Below are positions 720 through 51,600 of a DNA stretch of 64,000 bases, piece after piece. Position 1 is the stretch's first letter, and every line of letters begins with the position of its first letter. Source of the stretch: Ylistrum balloti (Eukaryota); NCBI RefSeq assembly GCF_031769215.1, contig NW_026782463.1:930001-994000 (forward strand). Reading direction: 5' to 3'. The notes under the pieces were generated by a model. That model was given only the letters and a program-made list of their open reading frames with translations, did not search any database and was not told the origin of the DNA. A program made the position numbers and the translations under genes.

Positions 720-1989
720 TACAAAATCAGACCTAGGATGCAACACAATTTCAGGAACAAAATATCTGTTCTATATTATGTGACAATTTGCAATAAGATC
801 ATTATGTGAGGAATAATTTGTAGCTATGCTTTAAAAAGCGTTGTTCAGTGGCTTATATTAACTGTTTACAATCATTGAGATTACAGAAGCACTTCCATGT
901 TGTTGGATATAGGATAACTAACATTTAAAAACATACCTGTCCTGCTATATTAGGTGCTTATGTTGGTTTGATAATCATTTTTTGAAGGAATTATTAACAT
1001 GAGTCCCGGACACCAGTTTTAAAATTTTGGTGCATTCCAATACCAAGAGATACAGCAGGGTCTCACAGAAAAAACATGAGTCAATGACTCAAATATCTTG
1101 AGTCCCAAAAATCACTGTTCAATTTTTAAAGTTTTATTTTTGTTTGGTATTTACATTTACATCTTTATGTGCTGAGGGATCAGGTTTTTTGTCAGCAGCA
1201 CACAGAATTTTTCAATGGTTAAAAAAGAAATATTTGATTGTGTTATTTTTTGTATCACTATTGATGTTGGACAACGTTGATTTCCTTTCAAAAGTTGTTG
1301 TACAAGTACAAAAATGTCTGTAATTGGAGAGATACTGTGTCTGGTTGAGTTAGTGTAGAAGTGATTTCTCTACTAAGTAAGTAGTAGGGGTTTTCTCCCT
1401 AATTCTGAATTTTTGATGATATGCATGTCATGTGTCCAGGCAATGTTCTACAAGATCTCAATATGACATGGATTTTTGTGATATCAATTGTTCCATGTGA
1501 TATCATTTTAAAGTTGTGCAATGTGATATATATTGTATCTTTAGTACCATGCTTACAATTACAACGATATTGATAAGTTTTTCTTAATTCCACATTCATG
1601 TGCCAATACAAGTGCTGAAGGTTGTAGAAGGGTACATCAGTGATCCAGTTAATTTCTTAACCCTGTTAAAGGAGTAATCAACAAGGAAGGGGATTCAAAT
1701 GTGTACTTTCATTTTCACGATTCGCAGTTTCAGATACATAACGAAACTGTAATGTTTGTTTTGACTGATCTAGCCCTGTTGTGTTTGAGTGACATAAAAT
1801 GTCATTAATGAAACGTTATTGCGTAAGATCAAATATCTACTTAATCAGCCCCAGAGGGGTTTACAAATAGATTAATCTAAAACACATATATACTGTACTG
1901 TGCTTATTCAGCAATAAGCTTAGTACTGATAACAACCTCACTCTTATCGTTTAGACTCCAGAAGAAACATCAGGTGTGTACAATGATAG

Positions 1990-2300
1990 AATAAGCCCAC
2001 CTTCCTACTTCTATTCATGAGTTAGGTGTTGGCCCCTGGACTTATTGTCCTGTAATAAGACCACCTTCTACCCTAACTCAGAAGTTAGGTGTTGGTCATG
2101 TGTACTTATTGTCTTGTGATAAGACTACCTTCTACTTTAACTCAGAAGTTAGGTGTTGGCCCCTGGACTTATTGTCCTGTAATAAGACCACCTTCTACTT
2201 TAACTCAGAAGTTAGGTGTTGACATCTGGGCTTATTGTCCTGCAATAAGACCACCACCCTGCTATAAGTCAAATATTAGGTGTTGGCCTCTGGGCTTATT
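1990..2300. repeat. ~63-bp tandem repeat, about 4.5 degenerate copies
   Basis: Unit gttaggtgttggcccctggacttattgtcctgtaataagaccaccttctac...tcagaa recurs at ~2021, 2084, 2149, 2211 and 2277; each unit has a small cttatt/aataag inverted pair. Confidence 0.9.
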
Positions 2301-3984
2301 GTAGGTTAAATACAGTAAATTAACTGGCTCACTGGTTTTGATATTACATGTGTCAAAGAATGTCGTCAATACAATTCAAAAGGATGTCAACATGATGATT
2401 TATCTGGTAGATATAACAAATGTCATTAAGGAAGACTTGGTACTTTATATTTTGATACCTACCTGGAAAAGTTTATACATGTACTTTGTGCTGTATTTTG
2501 AACCATGTTTACATTCACACTTGGCATATATCATTGTTATGCCATGATATTAATTCACACAATATACTGTACATGTTGATTTTGTTACAGAATCTTTATT
2601 TTTTGAAAGAACGTTGTTCTGTGATTTGATAAGGGGAACAAACATATGTTTTTGAGGTTTTCCCCCCCACTCCCCAAAACAGCCATCCGTGGAACCCATG
2701 ATAATTGGAAAGTATTTTGTCTGATGTCCTGAACAGAGAATACATACTACCTATCTTGTTAAGTTTGGATTATTCAAGCAGGGATATTTCTGAGTGTGAT
2801 TTTGGGATTTATTGCATGTTTTTTTTCTCCCTCACAAATGCGTTTGGCATTTACATAATTAAACATAAAATCTCCATCTTATTCCTTTCAAATTTTAAAA
2901 TTCTCTCCTGATAGTGAGGACCCAGAATTATCCCTGGAATAACAGCAAACAGAAATACAGGCTTGAATATTCATGTATCTTTACAAGGTGAATTTTATCA
3001 CCTTAAAAAAAAAAAAATAATTGATGAGGACTGTAATTTGACTAAATCATTTAATATTAGAATATCCTACAAGTACAAAAAAATTGAAACCTGCAATAAT
3101 TTGCCTTCTCATGAACTTGTGCCTTGTCATTAAATACCTTTTGGTTTTTATCAGTTTGATACTCATTTAAATTTATTGATTTTTGATCTTTATATAAATG
3201 ATTATTTTTTGGAAATTTATTTTAGGTACATACGTCTATTCTACAGAAGCAGTATCATACATTCAGTATTCACAGAAATTTCAGAGTAACAAGTTACCTC
3301 CCTTCATATAAAAACTGAATGTTTTCAAATGCTTTGCTTTTGAAATTAACTCTAATCCTTAGATATTGTTTTAAACCAAACATGATTAACACAGGCTTTT
3401 GGGTCATGCATGGAAACCACTGTCTCTCTTCATTAACTGAAATCTATGACTGAATGAATTGATGGCAACTGAGAAATTAACTTATTTTCAATGTAAGGGA
3501 AATGAAGTGTGAGCTTTGCCTCAAAATCAAATATTTACATTGAAATAAAAACAATTCTTCTTGTTGCAGTTTTGAGATTTTATTTTGTGAATCAAAAAGT
3601 TCAAAAGGTTTTTGCACAATAATGTTTTCAGGAGCACATTTTCTGATATGCAATATTACATACAAAGTGTATGTGAGCGTCATGCCCCAACATGAAATAC
3701 TTTTTATATTTGTCGTTTTTAGAGCTCTCTGAGCTACAGGTAACTTTGGAATGTTGAGGTCAGGAAGAAGAGTTCAGGTGAAAGTAATCCATTAAATGTC
3801 TAGTTATATTTGATACCAAGAAGGTTATTCCTGCAGGATATCTCTGTGTAAACAAAGGTACGGGTGAAAATAGATATTCCTCCAAAGACATCAGACACAT
3901 AGGGAAATACATTTTGACCACAGCAACCTTCTCATTAGAAAATTCTTTGTGACCATAGTAGCTGCCCCAAAAGAAAAATAATTG

Positions 3985-5440: not shown

Positions 5441-6697
5441 AGCGACAATCTCATTGGAAAATAAATTGTGAGTATAGTAGCTGACCCATTGGTGAACAAA
5501 ATATCTAATTGACACAAATGAAGTCATTGCTGTATTGACAATGTTTTCTCAAAAAAAAATGATAAATAAACTCCACGCGATGTTACGTCCCTTTTCAAAA
5601 CTGGGAAAACTGGTTGAAATTCCTAAAGGAATGAAGTAACTAAAGTCTTGACAAGAATTTTCTAATAATAGTTATGATGACCTTGATCTTCACCCTACAA
5701 CCCTGAAATGAATGTCCTTTATCTACCAAAATTGTCTTTCTAGGGAGTTACGTCCTTCCTACGGTAATGTCATTTGTCGGGTACATATCACATCTTGGAA
5801 AAGGCAGAACAGAATCGGCTTTAGTTGTTCACTTCATGATGTATGCACCTGACAAATACACTCAATACACAGGGTTTTGAGATGCATCTTGATGAAGACT
5901 AGAGAGTTTAACGGTCGTCATAGTGATCTCATTTTGAAATATTCTTTTTCCTTGTACGATATAAAGCTAGTGTTAAATGTTCGTTATTTACCTGTTGGTT
6001 TCGTTGTTGTTTACCGTTTCACATTTGAGAACGTGTCATAATTTAATTGGATTGATAAACGTGTAGTCGATGAACCAGAAGACGCTTACCCTTTCGGTAC
6101 ACCTGGTCTTATTTTTCTTTTTCAGAACTCTCCGTAAAAATCTTTTTTTTTTCATATTTTGTTTTTTTTTCATCAAATTAGATGTTTGAATTTACTTTGT
6201 TTCGTACCCGTACCTAACAGCCGATTTGATTGTACCCGAATCATATATCTACATACGCCTTTACAGGCCTCGGGTCAAATCGACCATTCGATTAGATTGT
6301 ACCGGGATCAGATATCTACATAGACCTAAGTAGGCCTCGACTCGAACCGACCTGTCGATTAGATTACAAACGGTTGATTTTGTTTGATGCAGGTGCGCAG
6401 CGAAATCACTTAGATATAACACATGTACAGTTCTAAATAATTACACCATAAACACGTGTGAATATGTAGTGGTGTAAAACATTTTATGTTACTTACTTAC
6501 AAACAATCTTTATATCGTGGCGATGTTCATATCCGATTTTATTTCAAGCATGTTATTAACATCGTCGTATTTATCAACAACCGCATTATCTACTGTTCAC
6601 TGTTTATACTTCCATTACAATATCGTCTTTTTATTAATTATTACTTATTTTACTACTTAATTACTTACATTGTATTTATTTAACATACAGCTGCCAT

Positions 6698-42600: not shown

Positions 42601-45600
42601 TGATAACAAGAGTTGTTTGACATAGGTGGATGTACAGACCCAGTATCACAAACAAAACATGATTTGAACACCAACACTATGGGCTACAAATACTGTAATA
42701 GTTTACTACATGTTATAACTGACATACTCAATGTCTTTCAATTCATATATCTTAATTAAAGTGAAAAGAGCAATGAAAACTTACCCCTCCACAGGGAGGG
42801 TGACCGCTTGGATCATCTCCAGGTTTGTTCCAATCCGCAAATCCACAGCAGTCAAATTTGAACTGGACTGAATCTTTGGTCTGGTTTGAAGCAAGTCTCC
42901 ATCCATTTTCTGCAAACTGTTCCTGCTGTTTCTCATTGATAGCGAGACATGCACAGGCCAAGGAGAATTGGAGCAGGAATAACAGGAACAGTATGATCAT
43001 GTACTGATACACATAAGGAATCTAATACCTCTAAAACTCACCTCCCTTAATGTTGTGTTGGTTAAATCATTATATGATATACATGTATGTATATGTGAAT
43101 GCAAATTGAAGCCTTATTTAACCAAATAAGAAATCTGAAAATAAAATCTACAGTTCTACTTTGCTTGATAAATATCTACAAAACAGGATATGAACTATTT
43201 GTAGTTGACGGAGATGTCTGTACATTTCACTATTTTCTCTGTGGCAGTGTACCAAGTGGTGACAGTATATTAATATTACCTATTTTTCAACTCTGCAAAC
43301 AATGAAAATAAGAACTTTGAATATTGCAATACAAAGTTCCCTGATTGCCATTATGTGTAAAATGTGCTGACTGAAATAATGAGAAATTTGGAAACTCCAT
43401 ATTTTTTATTAATACATAACACCAGTATAACATTGTCTTAGAAAGAATATAAAATTCATCAGTACAAGCTTAAATAAAGTCAGCTTGATAAAAAGGATAC
43501 AAAAAAGAGGAGCACCTGGTGATGCTTGATTGCACCAATGAGACCAATGAGGGAAATAATGAACAGGAAAACTCCACAGGCAATGATCCCTCCAACCAAG
43601 GTCAAATTGGTCACTATGGCGACAACTCTACCATATGCTGCCACGCCAATCAGAATAAATGACACAAACTGAAAGTAAATATGAAATGTAAATTTTATTC
43701 TCAATAAATGTAAACATCTACTTCTTAAAAGTTTACAAGGCAAAAGGGACATAACATACAATGTTATGTTACTGACAACAATCCAGTTACACATATGCAC
43801 CTTAAGTTGGCCAACAGTGAACACAATACCATGAATTCTGCCAATATGATTGATTTGTCTAAAACTCAGTGCTTAGATCTTACGAAAAAAAAAAAATATT
43901 CAAAGATACTACAATGACTTGAGCATAAGATCCATTTCACTTTTTTAATCTATTCTTCACTTTATTGAATATTAAACATAAGTTAAAGCAAATGCATGGA
44001 TTGACATTGTATACTGTGCATTTAATATCTCAATGTTGTCGAGGTCAACACACCAGGATCAGTGCATTGACCTAAGATTCAGTCACATTGTTATAATTGA
44101 AAGAAATAAACAATCCAACCCTAGATAAATGGTACAAAGTCAAATATGTTTATCTGCCTATCTAGATAGATATGTGCAATAGTACAAACTGGTGAATTTA
44201 CAAATATCCTAGATTTTTAGAATTTTCATAATAAAGGTAATGAGAATCATGTTATTCTGTGAAGAAAGTGACAGTACTCCAGGGAATAAAACAATATCCA
44301 TGGATCTCACATTTTGCCTGCAGTAATAATGTTGTCTGAAGTATGGAAGCACAATGGTTACTTACCTTTAAGTGTACAATCAAATTGACAGATGTTACAG
44401 TTCCAAACTTTTAGAGTAATGATAACTCATTAGTATTATGCCTTCTACACATTGTAACTGGGAGGAGGAATCTTATAAGACTAGAACTATTTTTCCCATA
44501 GATAACTTATTCTTCCCCTCCCCCAAAGGCCAGTTGAAATTCAGTCGAAACTTGTTATGTTGAAATTCAAGGGACCATGGAAAATATTTCAATTTTTCCG
44601 AATTTCCACTCAAACTGAGTGTCCAAATAAGGTTAACGATATCAGTTTCCCGACTTTGATTAAGGCTATGATAGTATGCAAACAGCGTATTTTAATCCGT
44701 TATTTGAAATGGCAGTAAAGAAACAAATAAATTTCTACTTTCTACTTTTATTGTTTAATTCATCCTAACAACAAATTACCTTCATTTATATACATTTGTA
44801 CTCACATCGTTCTGTCCCCCACAAGTGTACACTAACCTTACTAACCAAGCACATATACATCATATATCTTTATGGAATGACAATAAAAATGAAAGTTAAA
44901 TTACGCTACAAGAAACAATGTATTAAGCTACAGATCAAACTTACATGACTTTAATATGGACAAGGGCAGTCAGAGACAGATAATGCCCTCCAATCGGGAC
45001 AAAATTTAAGTATAAAAAATAACAATGGGCAATAGGAGAATTATGATTCTTGTACACTGCCCTCATACTCCATGACCTAGATAGGTCGAGATATCCTCAA
45101 CAGAGATAACCAAGAGAGAAATATCATTCCAATATCTGAACCTTGTGTGTCGCGACATTTATCACAAAGGAAAAATTGATGAATGGATATTTAATGAATA
45201 CATCTAGATAACTTAAAATTGATAAAGTGCATGATTTACTTTACTTTAACTATTAGGAAAAAAAAAAATTGAAGACAGATGCAAATCCCGAGATTTTGTT
45301 TGGATCCATTCCTATTTTGCATTAGTGTAGCTACTTTTTTTTTGCCATTTTTGAGAGAACCAAACATGCTTGAAAGGAGTATGTATGATTTGGGTCAAAT
45401 TTGGCCCCCTCTTCAAATTTGATGAAATACCTATACTGAGTAAGGATAGTAACGTAATTAATGAATTGGGGGATTTTAGCATGTTTTCTTTCTCGGCGCA
45501 TGCGTAGCGGCACTTCAAATATAGGTGTCACACCAGTATTTTTTAAGAGAAAAATGACACAAAGCATTACAAAAAGATTCTGTAACTTTTAATTATCATA

Positions 45601-48600
45601 CAAATATGCTGCTTAATATTGATGTAATTAAATCACTTATGGAAGTTATCAACTAATGGCTTTTGCTAGCAAAGGCTTAAATTAAACTTTTAATATATTT
45701 ACATTTGGTACCTTAGCAACGAATTATATCACATAGCAACGGCATGGCTATAAGATTTATTACTGGTAACAACATTTTCTATCGTCCGAACTTGTGTAAT
45801 GGAAACAAATCATAGCATATGTGACATAATTATATGGACTAACTTTTTTTACAAAGGTATTATAATGCAAACATTTGGGAAGTGACAATAATTTCCCTAG
45901 CAACAGAATGTGTCGCATAGCAACAACAATACCTTATATTGATAACAACATTTTCTTTCCAGTTTCAAGATTTTTCTTCTGCTGTACTTAATGAAAACAA
46001 AATATTTCTCATGTTTTCAGTAGCTAAACTTTCTAATAAAGGTATCACAATATAGATATTAGAGTATTGATCAAAGTTGGTGCCCTAGCAAAGTATTCTT
46101 ACACATGGCAAGAATATGACCTAAACTGTTATTTTTTTTTATACTGTTTCAATGTTTTTTATTGTACGTTATTTAATGAAAACAGATCATTATCACTTTA
46201 CATGGACTAACCTTTTCTTACGAAATATGTATAATATAAACATTTTGATACAGATCAAAGTTAGTACCCTAGCAACAGAGTCTATCACATAGCATACCTG
46301 TAATTGTTAACATATTCTTTTCTGTTACAATATTTTTCCACTTGTTACTTGTTGAAAGCGAAACACTTATCACATAATTTCATTGGTAAAACATTTTTGT
46401 TATAAAGGTATACTAGTGTACACAATATAAAAAATTGATTATTAATCAAAGTGTACAACAAAGTCTATCACATAGCAAGAACATCACCTGAAGCTGTTAT
46501 CGGTTTCTATTTTGCTTCATACTTCTGCACTGGTGCTTTTGAAAGCAAAGCATATTCGAAGCATATAATCAATGTATAACCTTTGGTTTTGTTCACAGAA
46601 TTTAACAAACATGAAAATGAACAAGTGATAAGCGACTTCAAATTATATCTACTTTAAATACATATAGTGTTACAGTTTATTCCTCTGGATACTCCTCATC
46701 CGTGTCGGAATCTGTTGTTGGAATGTCAGCTGCATCAGCCAAAGACTTTGTCGAAATAGTCACTGCCCCAGATGATTTGCCTTGGAAGCGTTCATATCCT
46801 AGAAACCACAATGCACTTGCAATGTGGGCACAGCAACCGACCACTCTTGAGCCTACTTTACAAGTGCAGTACCAACCTTTGATGGGATCATCAGAGAGTG
46901 AGTCATACTCAATCCACAAAGAATGTGCTCTGCTGTTACAGTGTCGAGACTGTATTTTTAACTTGATCAGATTAGGGTTTTCTGAGAAGACCAGCAACTC
47001 ATACAGTCCATCTTCAACACAGTGCTCCTTTGTATAACTTGGAGCCTGTTTAAGTTGATAAACTCCCATGGTGATGTTTCGTAAGTCATCCATGGAAAGT
47101 TTAGGGAAGTCCATCAAGTCTTCTGCTTCCAGCTTTTGATAAACAGTTCTCTTATTTAGTAAGTTGTTGCTTTCCAAAAATGCTTTCACTGTATTTGGTT
47201 CCTTGGACTTTGCAAGCATTGCCCTGCAATGTGCTTCTGATGTTGCGTCAGTTTTCACAAGTGGTTCTTTAAACCTGTTGATAAGAGCACAGATGATTCT
47301 CACAAAGTCACCAATAGAAGGGATCAGGGTATTTGGAACAACTTTGTCAAACAGTTTCCATTGTTTTATCCTGCCATTCACGCTTTCTACCACCCATCTG
47401 ACTTTTGTGACTAAACGTGAAAGGTTCGCCTCTTCGGTGCTGTGCTGCTTGCAGCCTTTCTGAAGATAGAAGGGCATTTTCACATCGAAACCTCGGTCTT
47501 CTAAAAACCTCACAGCGTCCCTAAACCCCCTGTCTACAATGAATATGTCGCCGGGTTTGAACCACTTGCTAGCTTCCTCATTTGCCTTAAGCATGTGTTT
47601 TGTAATGGAGGCATCGTTGTTTGAGCCATCAGCCAGGTAAGGTCCGAGCACATCCAGAATGTAGCCATCTGTTCCTACAAGCATCATTGGTTTAACGAGT
47701 GGTCTGTTCTTGTGCATAGAATAGGACCTCCTTTGGAATTTGTAGTCTGCACTCTTCTGGATGTAAACATAGGTGCCATCAGCAACAACAATAGCCTCGT
47801 TTTCGCCTGGTTGGAACAATGATTTTGCTATATTTGTAGTGTGGTTTTGAACAAAGTCTCCATGAGATATGTGTTGAAATCCAAGGTTATCTGGTACAAA
47901 ATCTTCCACTAAGGCATTCCTTGTGCTGTCACTATACGCTGGATTTGTGAATATGTTAAATGAAATAACACACCAATTAACTTGTTGGACAATCCACTAC
48001 GTAATTTGAAGAGAAACACAGCTAGACATGTCCGGATTGACCTAACTGCTGAATTATTAAGTGATGTCAAATGAGTGACAATTTCGTCAAACTGCTGTTT
48101 GGTAAATCCTGTCAATGTTACATAATCTTCATTGGTTAAAAATGATGGCACATCGAAATTCAAATGTCCAGAATGTGTAGACAGCATCCTTCGAACTCCG
48201 GAGAGAAGACCTGTAATATCACTTCTTGAAAACCAGTCATTTGATTTCTTGGTTCCAAGTAATGCCAACGCATTTTCATTCAGATAATTGTTCTCAATAT
48301 GGCTCTCACAACATCTACTATGGGGGTGTATGAATATACCACATACTATGAAGGCCTGAGTAGATCCTTGTTGTGGGATGTTGGTTAAATGGTTTCTTTG
48401 GTTTGCATCTTTATGACATACAATACATGATTTATGAGATTTTGATGTTGCGGGAAGGTTCAAATTAATAGTTTTAGGACTCGACAGTGTCTTTTTCTTT
48501 GGCGGCTGAGAAATGTACTCGTCATCATTAGTATTTACAGGTGTCTGGTGAAATATTGGAAGACTCCTATACACTCGTGCCGTACATGTCCCGCATATCA

Positions 48601-51600
48601 TGTCATTGCTACTCACGTCCCTGCCAACACATCGCTCCACATATCTTTTAAAGGCCACGCCAGGTGGGATATGCCTTCTGGAATTTGGTTTACACCTTTT
48701 GAAGCACAAGCAACATGGGATGTCTTTTGGCATCTGGAAAGAAATATTTGATAAGTATATTAATACTTTATACCAACCATATGAATCACGGTAACGTAGA
48801 AAAGTATAAAAAGAATATATAAACATAAAAGTGACAACTTTTTATGTGGAACTCAAAAGAATGTGTGTTCTATACATTGTATAAGAAATTAAAAGTTGTA
48901 AACATAGATATTATATTCATATTTAAATTACATAACATATTTTTGTCATAATTGATCAATAATTACACATTATTTAGTGAATATGTTGTTAAGTTTTTTA
49001 CAATGAAATTAAGAAAAAATAATAAAAAGGAACAGGCACCAGCACAACTGTAACTCACACAAATGTCGATAAATGTTTGTGAAATATGGATTGTCAACAA
49101 GATTTGAACTCACAGTTTAATTAATATTACAAATGTTATTTTCTTAATGTGAAAAAAATAAAATGTTGCTAAGCACTTTCAAGAACAGACTACATGGTTG
49201 CATTTTAAATTAAATTAAGAATAGGTATTTTTTTATTTGAAATCAAAATAAATAAATAAGAGTTGTCAACAGGATCTGAAGTCAGAGCTTAATTAATTAC
49301 ACAAATAGTTTTAATTAATGTTAAAAATAATAATGTGTTGCAAAGTTCTCGCTAGAAAATATGTATTATAGTTTTGTATCTTAAATTGAATATAAAAAAA
49401 AAATAAAAAATAAAAAAAAAAAAATCAATGGTCATCAGGATTGGATCCCATAATTGCGGTGCTTATGCTCCTGAGCCAACCCTCACACCACTACACCACG
49501 GAACAGCATATGCAACTGGAAGTTATTTTGAAAGTATATATACACCGACTATGTTGGCTTTCTCTCTGGCTGTTTCCAAGACAATGAGTATAAATAGATG
49601 CGCTCTTTCATTTCTATTTTTCCTTAGTTAATAAAACGAATATTTTTCAGACAGAAAGAAGACATTTTCAGTGGACTTCAACAAGACACACAGTCTCTGT
49701 TGAAGTTTATAATGAATTACTCTTGAATTTATTGTGAGCTCGCCTTCAGTCCAGACGACACTTCACCGTTTGTTCGGCGATCAACATCGACAACATTCAA
49801 GCTGGGCTTGGCAGCACAGAATAATACTGTTTCAGAACTTTAAAAAGTATTGAGATACCTTTAAATAGATTTTATTGTTAATAAATGACATTTGAATAAA
49901 TTTTTTAACAAACATCACACAAAGTTAGTGGATTTTTTGCCGTCTACCTGTATTGGGGCATCTGTCAACCAGACGTAAAACTGATGATGCAATCAAGTGT
50001 TGCAGACGTCCGATGAATAAAAAAAACTATTCATTTTTTATATCACATCAGTTAAAAATTTTTGCTAACAAGAACAAATCTTACCTTTCTTGGTTGTGAA
50101 AAATTAAGGAATTGTTGGTTTTAACTCCATCATTTGAGTGTTTCTGCTGCAGTAAACAAAAATATCGATAGCGGCGACGTCCGTTTTCCGTGTTCCGGAC
50201 CATATATTACACGCGATCTTGCATCAAAATGCCGAAAAATAATTTTAAAAATTAATTTTTTAATATGAGCGCAGTCTTGAACAAGTTTTTCCTTTTAACA
50301 CAATGACTTTATTAAAATTTTTATTTTGTAGCATCAATATGAAACTTGTTCAAGCCTGCGCTCATGGTAAACTTCAGTAAAATGTACCCACGAAATCGGG
50401 GAAATCACCGATTTTCGTGTTTTTTGTCAATTTTCAAACAGCTATATTAAAAAATTGGTGATATTTTTTAAATCTTGAAAACAATTCTAGAATCATGGAC
50501 ACTTCCATTATTAAATGTCTTCACTCTTTTGATTTTCTGAGACAGTTTTTCTCAGTAAAATGTTGGGGGTACATAGGTACCCAAACCATACATACTCCTT
50601 TTAGTCAACTTTTTAGTGAGTGAAATATTTTTTGATCCGATATTTTACTCAGGATGCCAGCTAAGTAGTTCTTTTAGGGACTGACATGGTTAGATTATAG
50701 GTATTGATTGAGGAACGCTTCCACATTGTTACATCATAAAAATTGTTTTTTCAAACCATTTTCTTGTTGAATTTGTTATTTGACTAAATGGGTAGTATAA
50801 ACATGGTAATAACTACTTAATTATCTGTATAATGACCTCATCTAAACCAACCATTTGCCTAAGCCGGATCCCGAGTCCTGACCAATAGTATACCATTAAT
50901 TACCTAGGTAAGGAACAATCGGCCATGTACAAGTGTGCTCCCAAGCATAGCGGTCAGTGAGGATTACCTTGAATTGGCTATCACTAGTATGATAACTGGG
51001 CTGTGTACTCACATAGCTAGGCCTTGATTATGTGGCCAGGTGGTCAGCATTTCCAATCTGACAAATATAGCAATGTTACTTATAACCTACCTAGTGGGAT
51101 CTCTGAAATAGGGAGATTTTCCCAATTTTGATCCATACGATCGGGAGACGGGGATGGGGAGAGAAAATCAGGAAACTCCTGACTGAATTGGAAAAGTTGG
51201 CAGGTATGCTTAAAGTAGCTTAACTTCATGCAGAGTCAAGGAATGAAGACCTTTCCATGTCAGTGACCCTGTGAAGGTACCTAGAAGCCACAAGCATTGC
51301 TGTTATTAAATTCTAAAAGGGGAGTTTTTTTCACTGATGAGTCTCTAACCCTGGTTTAACATTTGCCAACATTCTTACCTTCTTGTCCAGCCTAATAAAG
51401 ATAAACCTATAATACACCTAAAACTGCTTCTTATTTCCTTTAAAAACCAATTTTACAGCGACAACTAATATTTACATCTGCATGTTTCTCTCTGTCATTA
51501 TCATAATGTTGGAAAAAGCTAAGGAAAACTAACCAAGTTCAGTTTAGTTTAAGTTTGATGCCTAATCATTACAATCAAAATTCTAAAAAAAAAAAAAAGG

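What the first reader, a model, noticed from the sequence alone, without database searches (positions are those of the whole stretch)
45377..50598. Near-intact 5.2-kb transposon combining a Spy-type AAA|TTT no-TSD insertion with a Harbinger/ISL2EU-type DDE-SWIM transposase
Seen in sequence: a 20-bp TIR pair (1 mismatch) with flanks reading AAA|element|TTT and no duplication; one transposase gene with DGT, DRGF and RxxVExxxGxxK motifs, N-terminal Cys clusters, an HTH and a C-terminal SWIM finger; no second Myb-like or YqaJ-like ORF. Established: within the PHIS group, AAATTT targeting without TSD is the hallmark of Spy, PIF/Harbinger makes TWA TSDs and usually has a Myb/SANT partner, and ISL2EU makes AT TSDs and has a YqaJ partner. 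Inference: this one-gene, SWIM-fused, TSD-less element may be a poorly described PHIS lineage and is probably young, since it has a single lesion.
Basis: partly seen in the sequence, partly recalled or inferred. Interest (0 to 1): 0.7.

Follow-up and report, generated by a model that had tools for sequence, protein, structure and literature searches.

The report
Young Spy transposon in a scallop
This is a very recently active copy of a Spy-type jumping gene in the scallop Ylistrum balloti; it belongs to a known kind, is disabled here by one missing base, and has intact sister copies elsewhere in the genome.

Summary
A 5,223-bp element (window 45376-50598) has 20-bp inverted ends with one mismatch, starting GGAGTATG. 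It sits between host AAA and TTT and carries one transposase gene on the minus strand. A 1-bp deletion at about 47930 is its only coding lesion.

This is not a hybrid or a poorly described PHIS lineage. It meets the published hallmarks of the Spy group: AAA|TTT target without duplication, GGANNNNG ends, a single DDE gene and an N-terminal helix-turn-helix.

- **Copies:** the genome (Ylistrum balloti) holds at least 8 full-length copies that differ by 0.3-2.4%. Four have an intact 685-aa frame. One deletion derivative has spread to four loci.
- **Empty sites:** two paralogous empty sites show that AAA and TTT are host DNA.
- **SWIM finger:** it is real (ZSWIM8-like fold, Z 8.1) but occurs in relatives from bivalves, a gastropod, insects and metagenomes. 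The three Spy papers I read do not mention it.

Ylistrum is absent from the 2024 Spy catalogue, so this is a new member of a known kind. First-stage readers flagged three similar AAA|TTT DDE+SWIM elements on other pieces of this genome.

The parts
45373..45375 (+). Host AAA, the left half of the AAATTT target.
   Evidence: Shown to be host DNA by the paralogous empty sites of sister copies.
45376..50598 (-). Whole Spy-group element, 5,223 bp. The transposase is on the minus strand.
   Evidence: At least 8 full-length copies at 97-100% identity end at the same bases.
45376..45395 (+). Terminal inverted repeat at the low-coordinate end (3' of the gene), GGAGTATGTATGATTTGGGT. It fits the Spy motif GGANNNNG.
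   Evidence: motif from PMC4122938.
45700..46480 (.). About five degenerate tandem units of roughly 184 bp in the non-coding part downstream of the stop codon. Shared core CCCTAGCAAC..TCACATAGCA.
   Evidence: direct-repeat families with 184-188 bp spacing and 62-95% identity.
46677..48733 (-). Transposase gene. It encodes 685 aa in intact copies. Here it is split by a 1-bp deletion at about 47930, after codon 268, inside the HTH region. The stop codon is at 46677-46679.
   Evidence: Pfam DDE_Tnp_4 at E 5e-19.
47929..47931 (-). Site of the single missing A, the frameshift.
   Evidence: alignment column '-AAAAAA' against six other copies.
47385..47780 (-). Catalytic core from D319 to E450. D319 is at 47778-47780, D401 at 47532-47534 and E450 at 47385-47387.
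   Evidence: for positions. The three residues are invariant in 91 aligned sequences. The model has an RNase H-like fold; its best PDB rows are retroviral intasomes and the piggyBac, ISCth4 and Tn5 transposases.
46782..47102 (-). Extended SWIM domain, aa 545-651. The zinc ligands C623, C625, C635 and H637 lie at 46824-46868.
   Evidence: for conservation. ZSWIM8 residues 114-212, Z 8.1, rmsd 3.0 A over 92 residues. The Pfam SWIM hit is below threshold.
48584..48715 (-). N-terminal zinc finger 1 (C7, C10, C47, C50).
   Evidence: Invariant or at least 90% conserved.
48299..48427 (-). Zinc finger 2 (C103, C106, C142, H145), pattern C-x2-C-x35-C-x2-H. The spacing is THAP-like, but THAP membership is not shown.
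   Evidence: Invariant in 91 sequences. No Pfam THAP hit.
50579..50598 (+). Terminal inverted repeat at the high-coordinate end (5' of the gene).
50599..50601 (+). Host TTT, the right half of the AAATTT target.

Best explanation
The feature is a copy of a young, autonomous Spy-group DNA transposon (PHIS superfamily) in the scallop Ylistrum balloti.

**Protein layout.** Its single gene encodes a 685-aa transposase. In order, the protein has a C4 zinc finger, a C2CH zinc finger, a helix-turn-helix, an RNase H-like DDE core (D319, D401, E450), an extended SWIM zinc-finger domain and an acidic tail.

**Shown here.** The family's ends are GGAGTATG...CATACTCC. Copies sit exactly between host AAA and TTT with nothing duplicated. 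Several copies are intact and nearly identical. A transposase-less deletion derivative has spread to four loci, which implies mobilisation in trans.

**Inferred from the literature and the protein's make-up.** The transposase binds the ends through its N-terminal fingers and HTH. It cuts the element out and joins both 3' ends at the same phosphodiester position of the palindromic AAATTT. The cut is therefore not staggered and no duplication arises.

The window copy itself is dead because of one frameshift, but it could still be moved by the intact copies.
For: - **Ends and flanks:**. Positions -3/-2/-1 of the 31 distinct junction flanks are A in 28, 29 and 27.
- **Empty sites:** the joined flanks of the C959 and C991 copies align without a gap across the junction to paralogous repeat units. 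These read GCAAATT[C/A]TTT or GTAAATTTTT, and TTCATATTTAAT, so AAA and TTT are host DNA and nothing is duplicated.
- **Spy definition:** AAA|TTT, GGANNNNG, one ORF, HTH, D(79-80)D(44-62)E (PMC4122938). Here the ends are GGA-GTAT-G, there is one ORF, the HTH_Tnp_4 hit has E 1.2e-4, and the spacings are 81 and 48.
- **Relatives:** about 450 relatives. Full-length ones of 680-700 aa occur in oysters, scallops, mussels, clams, a gastropod, Lepidoptera and Hymenoptera. Species catalogued as carrying Spy with 685-690-aa ORFs are among them.
- **Activity of Spy elsewhere:** cgSpy and cvSpy transpose in human cells without TSD at AAATTT (PMC11304231).
- **Youth:** copies differ by 0.3-2.4%. Four have intact 685-aa frames. 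The window copy differs from the majority of copies at 12 positions in 5.2 kb, only one of them coding.
- **Deletion derivative:** breakpoints 946/1095 and 1894/3168 are shared at four loci with different flanks.
- **Fold:** AlphaFold model with pLDDT 89.7. Its DDE core resembles integrase, piggyBac, ISCth4 and Tn5. The C-terminal domain resembles the ZSWIM8 SWIM region.
Against: - No phylogeny against named Spy, ISL2EU, PIF, Pangu or Nuwa references could be built, because no Repbase or Dfam sequences are on hand. Clade membership therefore rests on structural hallmarks and on the host species of the relatives.
- The D-to-D spacing is 81, or 82 in most relatives, against the published 79-80.
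- One copy (C1121) is flanked by TTTCTAAA on both sides where paralogs have that word only once. This could be a pre-existing local duplication or an atypical insertion.
- Three copies have ends that lack the last 2-3 nt and the AAA or TTT flank.
- No allelic empty site was found for the window copy.
- The blunt-joining mechanism is inferred, not shown.
Confidence: 0.9

Rival explanations
1. It belongs to a separate, undescribed PHIS lineage. On this view the lineage acquired AAA|TTT targeting and a SWIM finger independently of Spy.
For: No Spy paper in the library mentions a SWIM finger. The D-to-D spacing of 81 falls just outside the published 79-80. No reference tree could be built.
Against: Every structural hallmark of Spy is met. 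The whole 685-aa layout, SWIM included, is conserved end to end in relatives from oysters, ants and parasitoid wasps. The 2024 catalogue lists Spy elements with ORFs of the same length in those species. SWIM is kept in 48 of 50 distant metagenome relatives.
Confidence: 0.05
2. AAA and TTT are the outermost bases of a 23-bp TIR, and the element inserts at arbitrary sites without a TSD.
For: AAA and TTT are mutually complementary, so sequence at filled sites alone cannot place the boundary.
Against: Two paralogous empty sites keep an uninterrupted AAATT[C/A]-like or ATATTT hexamer. They align without a gap to the joined flanks when AAA and TTT are counted as flank. Experimental Spy insertions target AAATTT (PMC11304231).
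Confidence: 0.03
3. It is an ISL2EU or PIF/Harbinger element whose target-site duplication has been missed or eroded.
For: Pfam sees only DDE_Tnp_4 and HTH_Tnp_4, which all PHIS groups share. Oyster Spy families were first filed in Repbase as ISL2EU.
Against: There is no 2-bp or 3-bp direct repeat at any of about 15 two-ended copies that are under 2.5% diverged. There is no YqaJ or Myb/SANT ORF.
Confidence: 0.02

Closest known systems
Spy group of the PHIS superfamily (Han et al. 2014, PMC4122938; Crgi-Spy, Crvi-Spy/cvSpy and cgSpy in Diaby et al. 2024, PMC11304231)
   Same: Insertion between AAA and TTT without a TSD, TIRs starting GGANNNNG, and a single DDE gene with an N-terminal DNA-binding region. 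Size and ORF length almost equal Crgi-Spy (5,236 bp and 685 aa, against 5,223 bp and 685 aa here). Low-divergence copies suggest current activity, as reported for Crassostrea virginica.
   Different: The host is a pectinid. The catalogue has only fragments for that order (Mizuhopecten at 284 aa and Pecten at 372 aa) and does not list Ylistrum. The nearest named protein is only 57% identical (Crassostrea angulata). The SWIM domain and the two zinc fingers are not described in the Spy papers I read.
ISL2EU elements
   Same: They are the sister group of Spy in published trees, share the DDE_Tnp_4-type core, and have TIRs starting GG.
   Different: Neither is present here.
PIF/Harbinger elements
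   Same: The same Pfam DDE_Tnp_4 and HTH_Tnp_4 domains.
   Different: PIF/Harbinger elements make 3-bp TSDs and carry a Myb/SANT partner gene. Neither is present here.
MULE/MuDR transposases and their FAR1/FHY3 and MUSTANG derivatives; ZSWIM proteins
   Same: A SWIM zinc finger (CxCxnCxH) C-terminal to a DDE transposase core. The fold of the domain matches the ZSWIM8 SWIM region (Z 8.1).
   Different: They belong to an unrelated DDE superfamily, and MULEs make 9-12-bp TSDs. No sequence similarity was seen outside the finger.

Membership tests
Spy (PHIS superfamily) | Insertion exactly between host AAA and TTT, with no target-site duplication or deletion. | tested here: met
   Positions -3/-2/-1 of the 31 distinct junction flanks are A in 28, 29 and 27. 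There is no repeat beyond them. Two paralogous empty sites align without a gap across the junction. One further site is ambiguous.
Spy (PHIS superfamily) | TIR terminal consensus 5'-GGANNNNG-3'. | tested here: met
   Both ends read GGAGTATG. The consensus is from PMC4122938.
Spy (PHIS superfamily) | A single ORF, with no Myb/SANT or YqaJ partner gene. | tested here: met
   There is only one long frame. The four other ORFs of 50 aa or more have no Pfam hit.
Spy (PHIS superfamily) | Catalytic triad spacing D(79-80)D(44-62)E. | tested here: inconclusive
   D319, D401 and E450 give 81 and 48 residues between them. The second value fits. The first is 1-2 above the published range, and counting conventions are unknown.
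Spy (PHIS superfamily) | Helix-turn-helix N-terminal to the DDE core. | tested here: met
   HTH_Tnp_4 has E 1.2e-4 at aa 237-278, below Pfam's cut-off. It is matched by 21 of 25 relatives, and the model is helical there.
Spy (PHIS superfamily) | Transposase groups with the Spy clade, not with ISL2EU, PIF/Harbinger, Pangu or Nuwa. | not testable with these tools
The support is circumstantial: full-length relatives come from Magallana gigas (685 aa), Cyphomyrmex costatus and Leptopilina boulardi. All three species are catalogued with Spy ORFs of 685-690 aa.
PIF/Harbinger | 3-bp TSD (TWA) and a second Myb/SANT gene. | tested here: not met
ISL2EU | Short TSD and a second YqaJ-domain gene. | tested here: not met
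SWIM zinc finger (Pfam PF04434) | CxCxnCxH zinc-ligand signature, conserved. | tested here: met
   C623, C625 and C635 are invariant and H637 is at least 90% conserved in 91 sequences. The motif is kept in 48 of 50 metagenome relatives.
SWIM zinc finger (Pfam PF04434) | Score above Pfam's gathering threshold. | tested here: not met
   The score is 13.7 bits against a cut-off of 19.6. Only 8 of 25 relatives reach E <= 0.1, the best at 0.005. Some relatives carry UniRef's automatic name 'SWIM-type domain-containing protein'.
SWIM zinc finger (Pfam PF04434) | Fold like solved SWIM domains. | tested here: met
   The domain model (pLDDT 83) matches ZSWIM8 residues 114-212 with Z 8.1, rmsd 3.0 A over 92 residues. 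The next unrelated row has Z 4.3. The SWIM protein Shu2 scores Z 4.0. Among the 50 Foldseek rows shown, ZSWIM8 has the highest TMq (0.55), although its E-value is not significant.
THAP zinc finger | C2CH signature C-x2-4-C-x35-53-C-x2-H plus a match to the THAP profile. | tested here: inconclusive
   The spacing C103-x2-C106-x35-C142-x2-H145 fits the signature as I recall it, and the residues are invariant. No member matches Pfam THAP at E <= 0.1. The domain was not folded on its own.

The most novel reading that the evidence does not exclude
Spy transposases as a whole group carry a C-terminal extended SWIM domain with a ZSWIM8-like fold, plus two N-terminal zinc fingers. This layout is absent from the Spy papers I could read. 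The SWIM module might be what reads the AAATTT target or enforces the unstaggered, duplication-free joining that sets Spy apart from all other cut-and-paste transposons.
Probability: 0.2. Interest if true: 0.55.

Novelty: new member of a known kind. Interest (0 to 1): 0.3.

Why it matters
Spy elements are the only eukaryotic cut-and-paste transposons known to insert without duplicating their target. One of them, cgSpy, is being developed as a gene-transfer tool.

This scallop family adds a very young mollusc member with several intact copies and a trans-mobilised deletion derivative. It is a natural candidate for an activity assay, and it is the first intact Spy found in Pectinida compared with the 2024 catalogue.

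The comparative result is of modest general use. An extended SWIM domain and two zinc fingers are conserved in relatives from bivalves, a gastropod, insects and metagenomes, which gives concrete residues to mutate when asking how Spy picks AAATTT and avoids a staggered cut. Otherwise the element is an ordinary member of a described group.

Tried and rejected
- **Reads.** The indel and an empty allele could therefore not be checked in reads or contigs. After that I sent no query containing those places to any search tool, and my tandem-repeat, tRNA and Rfam scans stopped at 50231. Local scripts did read whole locus files.
- **Runs.** The look-up of sequencing runs listed five DNA holders with 0.76-0.77 of the words and no RNA holder on record, so expression is untested.
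- **Empty-site searches.** Those with the flanks of the window copy and of the C961, C493 and C153 copies found only the loci themselves.
- **Closed or exhausted tools.** The other two Spy-like families of this genome and the oyster relatives could therefore not be inspected for ends.
- **Viral contigs.** No relative was found.
- **Metagenome contigs.** They gave 80 relatives, but the contigs are short or break inside long inverted repeats. No complete ends could be read, and scans for AAA|GG...CC|TTT pairs were uninformative.
- **PDB.** The sequence search gave only chance hits to Kalirin.
- **ARAGORN and Rfam.** Nothing was found in the non-coding parts.
- **Pfam THAP.** No hit.
- **Readings considered and rejected.** A domesticated gene does not fit, because there are many copies with TIRs. 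A chimera of two elements does not fit, because TIRs and gene travel together in all full-length copies.
Full report
**What is in the sequence.** The element runs from 45376 to 50598, which is 5,223 bp. Its ends are GGAGTATGTATGATTTGGGT and, reverse-complemented, GGAGTATGTATGGTTTGGGT, a 20-bp pair with one mismatch. AAA lies immediately to the left and TTT immediately to the right, with no direct repeat beyond them.

On the minus strand there is one gene at 46677-48733, seen as two open pieces of 305 and 410 codons. Pfam finds DDE_Tnp_4 (E 5e-19), a weak HTH_Tnp_4 and a sub-threshold SWIM hit. No other ORF of 50 aa or more matches any Pfam family, so there is no Myb/SANT or YqaJ partner.

**Copies in the same genome.** The best protein hit is a RefSeq model of Ylistrum balloti that is 99-100% identical, so the window comes from this scallop.

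- The 648-Mb assembly holds at least 8 full-length copies at 97-100% identity, plus fragments.
- All copies end at the same bases. Of the 31 distinct junction flanks, positions -3/-2/-1 are A in 28, 29 and 27.
- Seven full-length copies differ pairwise by 0.3-2.4%.
- Four copies (on C258, C49, C959 and C1121) have an uninterrupted 685-aa frame.
- Against six copies, the window copy differs from the majority at 12 positions. The only one in the coding region is a missing A at about 47930, after codon 268.
- A derivative lacking element positions 947-1094 and 1895-3167, which removes most of the gene, occurs with the same breakpoints at four loci with different flanks. It has therefore been moved in trans.

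**Target site.** Filled sites alone cannot show whether AAA and TTT belong to the element, because the two are complementary. Two copies lie inside other repeats, which gives paralogous empty sites.

- For the C959 copy, the joined flanks GTAGCAAA|TTTTTTGAAAA align without a gap to satellite units reading GAAGCAAATTCTTTAAAA, GAGCAAATTATTTAAAA and GAGTAAATTTTTAAAAA.
- For the C991 copy, TTTTTTTTTCAAA|TTTAGTCGG aligns without a gap to TTTTTTTTTCATATTTAATGG in three paralogs.
- AAA and TTT are therefore host DNA, and nothing is duplicated or lost.
- A third case, C1121, is ambiguous. The element is flanked by TTTCTAAA on both sides, while five paralogs at 89-94% identity over the joined flanks read ...AAAATGTCATTTCTAAAG with that word only once. 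Either a local duplication created the AAATTT before insertion, or this was an atypical event.

**Which family.** Han et al. 2014 define Spy by the following features (PMC4122938):

- insertion between AAA and TTT without TSD;
- a TIR terminal motif GGANNNNG;
- a single ORF with D(79-80)D(44-62)E;
- an N-terminal HTH.

Here the ends are GGA-GTAT-G, there is one ORF, the HTH is present, and the spacings are 81 and 48. All features are met except the first spacing, which is 1-2 residues over the range.

The PHIS survey states that Spy alone has one gene, while the other groups have a Myb/SANT or YqaJ partner (PMC4482050). The 2024 catalogue gives these entries, all with AAA/TTT flanks:

| Element | Host | Size | ORF |
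|---|---|---|---|
| Crgi-Spy | Crassostrea gigas | 5,236 bp | 685 aa |
| Cyco-Spy | Cyphomyrmex costatus | 3,461 bp | 690 aa |
| Lebo-Spy | Leptopilina boulardi | 5,512 bp | 688 aa |

My protein search returned full-length relatives from these same species, and from many bivalves, a gastropod and Lepidoptera, at 40-59% identity over 97-100% of the query.

For Pectinida the catalogue has only fragments, and Ylistrum is not listed. I therefore file the element as a new member of the Spy group, not as a new lineage. A tree against named Repbase references could not be built with the tools at hand, and that remains the one untested membership criterion.

**The SWIM finger and other domains.** In alignments of 25 and 91 sequences, the following are invariant or at least 90% conserved:

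- C7, C10, C47, C50 (first zinc finger);
- C103, C106, C142, H145 (second finger, C-x2-C-x35-C-x2-H);
- D319, D401, E450 (catalytic triad);
- the block W621-Y-C623-x-C625...G633-x-C635-x-H637 (SWIM).

In 50 more distant relatives from metagenome contigs (31-60% identical over this region), the CxC...CxH motif is kept in 48.

The full-length AlphaFold model is confident (pLDDT 89.7). Its core resembles retroviral integrases and the piggyBac, ISCth4 and Tn5 transposases. The C-terminal domain folded alone (pLDDT 83) matches the SWIM region of ZSWIM8 with Z 8.1, rmsd 3.0 A over 92 residues. The next unrelated row scores Z 4.3, and the SWIM protein Shu2 scores Z 4.0.

The Pfam SWIM model stays below its threshold. 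Some relatives already carry UniRef's automatic name 'SWIM-type domain-containing protein'.

The three Spy papers I read contain no mention of SWIM or zinc fingers. The only library paper that mentions both Spy and SWIM does so in unrelated passages. The SWIM fusion is therefore real but is a trait of the whole family. Its absence from the literature I could read is a small gap, not a discovery about this element.

**Mechanism.** Three things are shown here: defined ends, a palindromic AAATTT target with no duplication, and recent mobility that includes trans-mobilisation of a deletion derivative. Others have shown that native Spy transposases from a bee and an oyster transpose in human cells, prefer AAATTT and leave no TSD (PMC11304231).

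The rest is inferred. The two zinc fingers and the HTH probably bind the ends. The DDE core cuts the element out and joins both 3' ends at the same position between A and T, so no gap is left to fill. The SWIM domain may contribute to DNA or target binding. The window copy is inactive by frameshift but keeps both ends.

**Limits.**
No query containing those letters was sent to any search tool afterwards.
- No allelic empty site exists in the assembly for the window copy.
- Metagenome contigs were too short or broke inside long inverted repeats, so the ends of distant relatives could not be read.
- First-stage readers flagged three similar AAA|TTT DDE+SWIM elements on other pieces of this genome. 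I could not fetch them. One search does show at least two further Spy-like transposase families in the genome.

Noticed in passing
L008 (G000:C1121:70924-76108), flanks at L008:1481-1488 and 6686-6693: This copy is flanked by the same 8-bp word TTTCTAAA on both sides. Five paralogs of the surrounding repeat have the word once and carry TGTCA in front of it. It may be a pre-existing local duplication that created the AAATTT target, or a rare insertion with a duplication.
   Followed up: partly
L002 right end, L003 left end, L005 both ends: Three otherwise near-identical copies lack the last 2-3 bases of one or both ends and also lack the AAA or TTT flank. Possible causes are aborted excision with repair, adjacent deletions, or assembly joins.
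   Followed up: no
G000 C153:22218-25995, C36:1347797-1351573, C363:324513-328999, C493:801882-804195: These loci hold a transposase-less deletion derivative of the element with shared breakpoints (946/1095 and 1894/3168) at four loci with different flanks. It is a non-autonomous sub-family in the making.
   Followed up: partly
window 45700-46480: About five degenerate tandem units of roughly 184 bp lie downstream of the stop codon, with a conserved core CCCTAGCAAC..TCACATAGCA. They could be subterminal binding sites or just an internal minisatellite.
   Followed up: no
window 48734-48745 (minus strand): The ATG is directly preceded by tttctttccag, which looks like a splice acceptor and suggests an intron in the 1.86-kb leader. 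No RNA data could be laid to test this.
   Followed up: no
window 49389-49520: An A-rich run of 31-37 bases (49389-49425) lies next to a stretch whose reverse complement begins like a tRNA (GCTGTTCCGTGGTGTAGTGGT...). ARAGORN and Rfam find nothing, so it may be a SINE-like fragment carried inside the element.
   Followed up: partly
window 50259-50288 and 50342-50371: A 30-nt inverted repeat, 90% complementary and 53 nt apart, lies about 230-340 bp inside the 5' end of the element.
   Followed up: no
own genome, (for example C71:404433-406780; C113:646619-648403): There are at least two further Spy-like transposase families in this genome. One is identical to RefSeq LOC132565127, is split into two exons and has about 8 copies. 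The other has dozens of copies with open frames of roughly 690 codons, 46-48% identical to the first.
   Followed up: partly
window 44576-44960: The DNA about 400-800 bp left of the element is a dispersed repeat of about 390 bp, with more than 40 copies at 71-79% identity.
   Followed up: no
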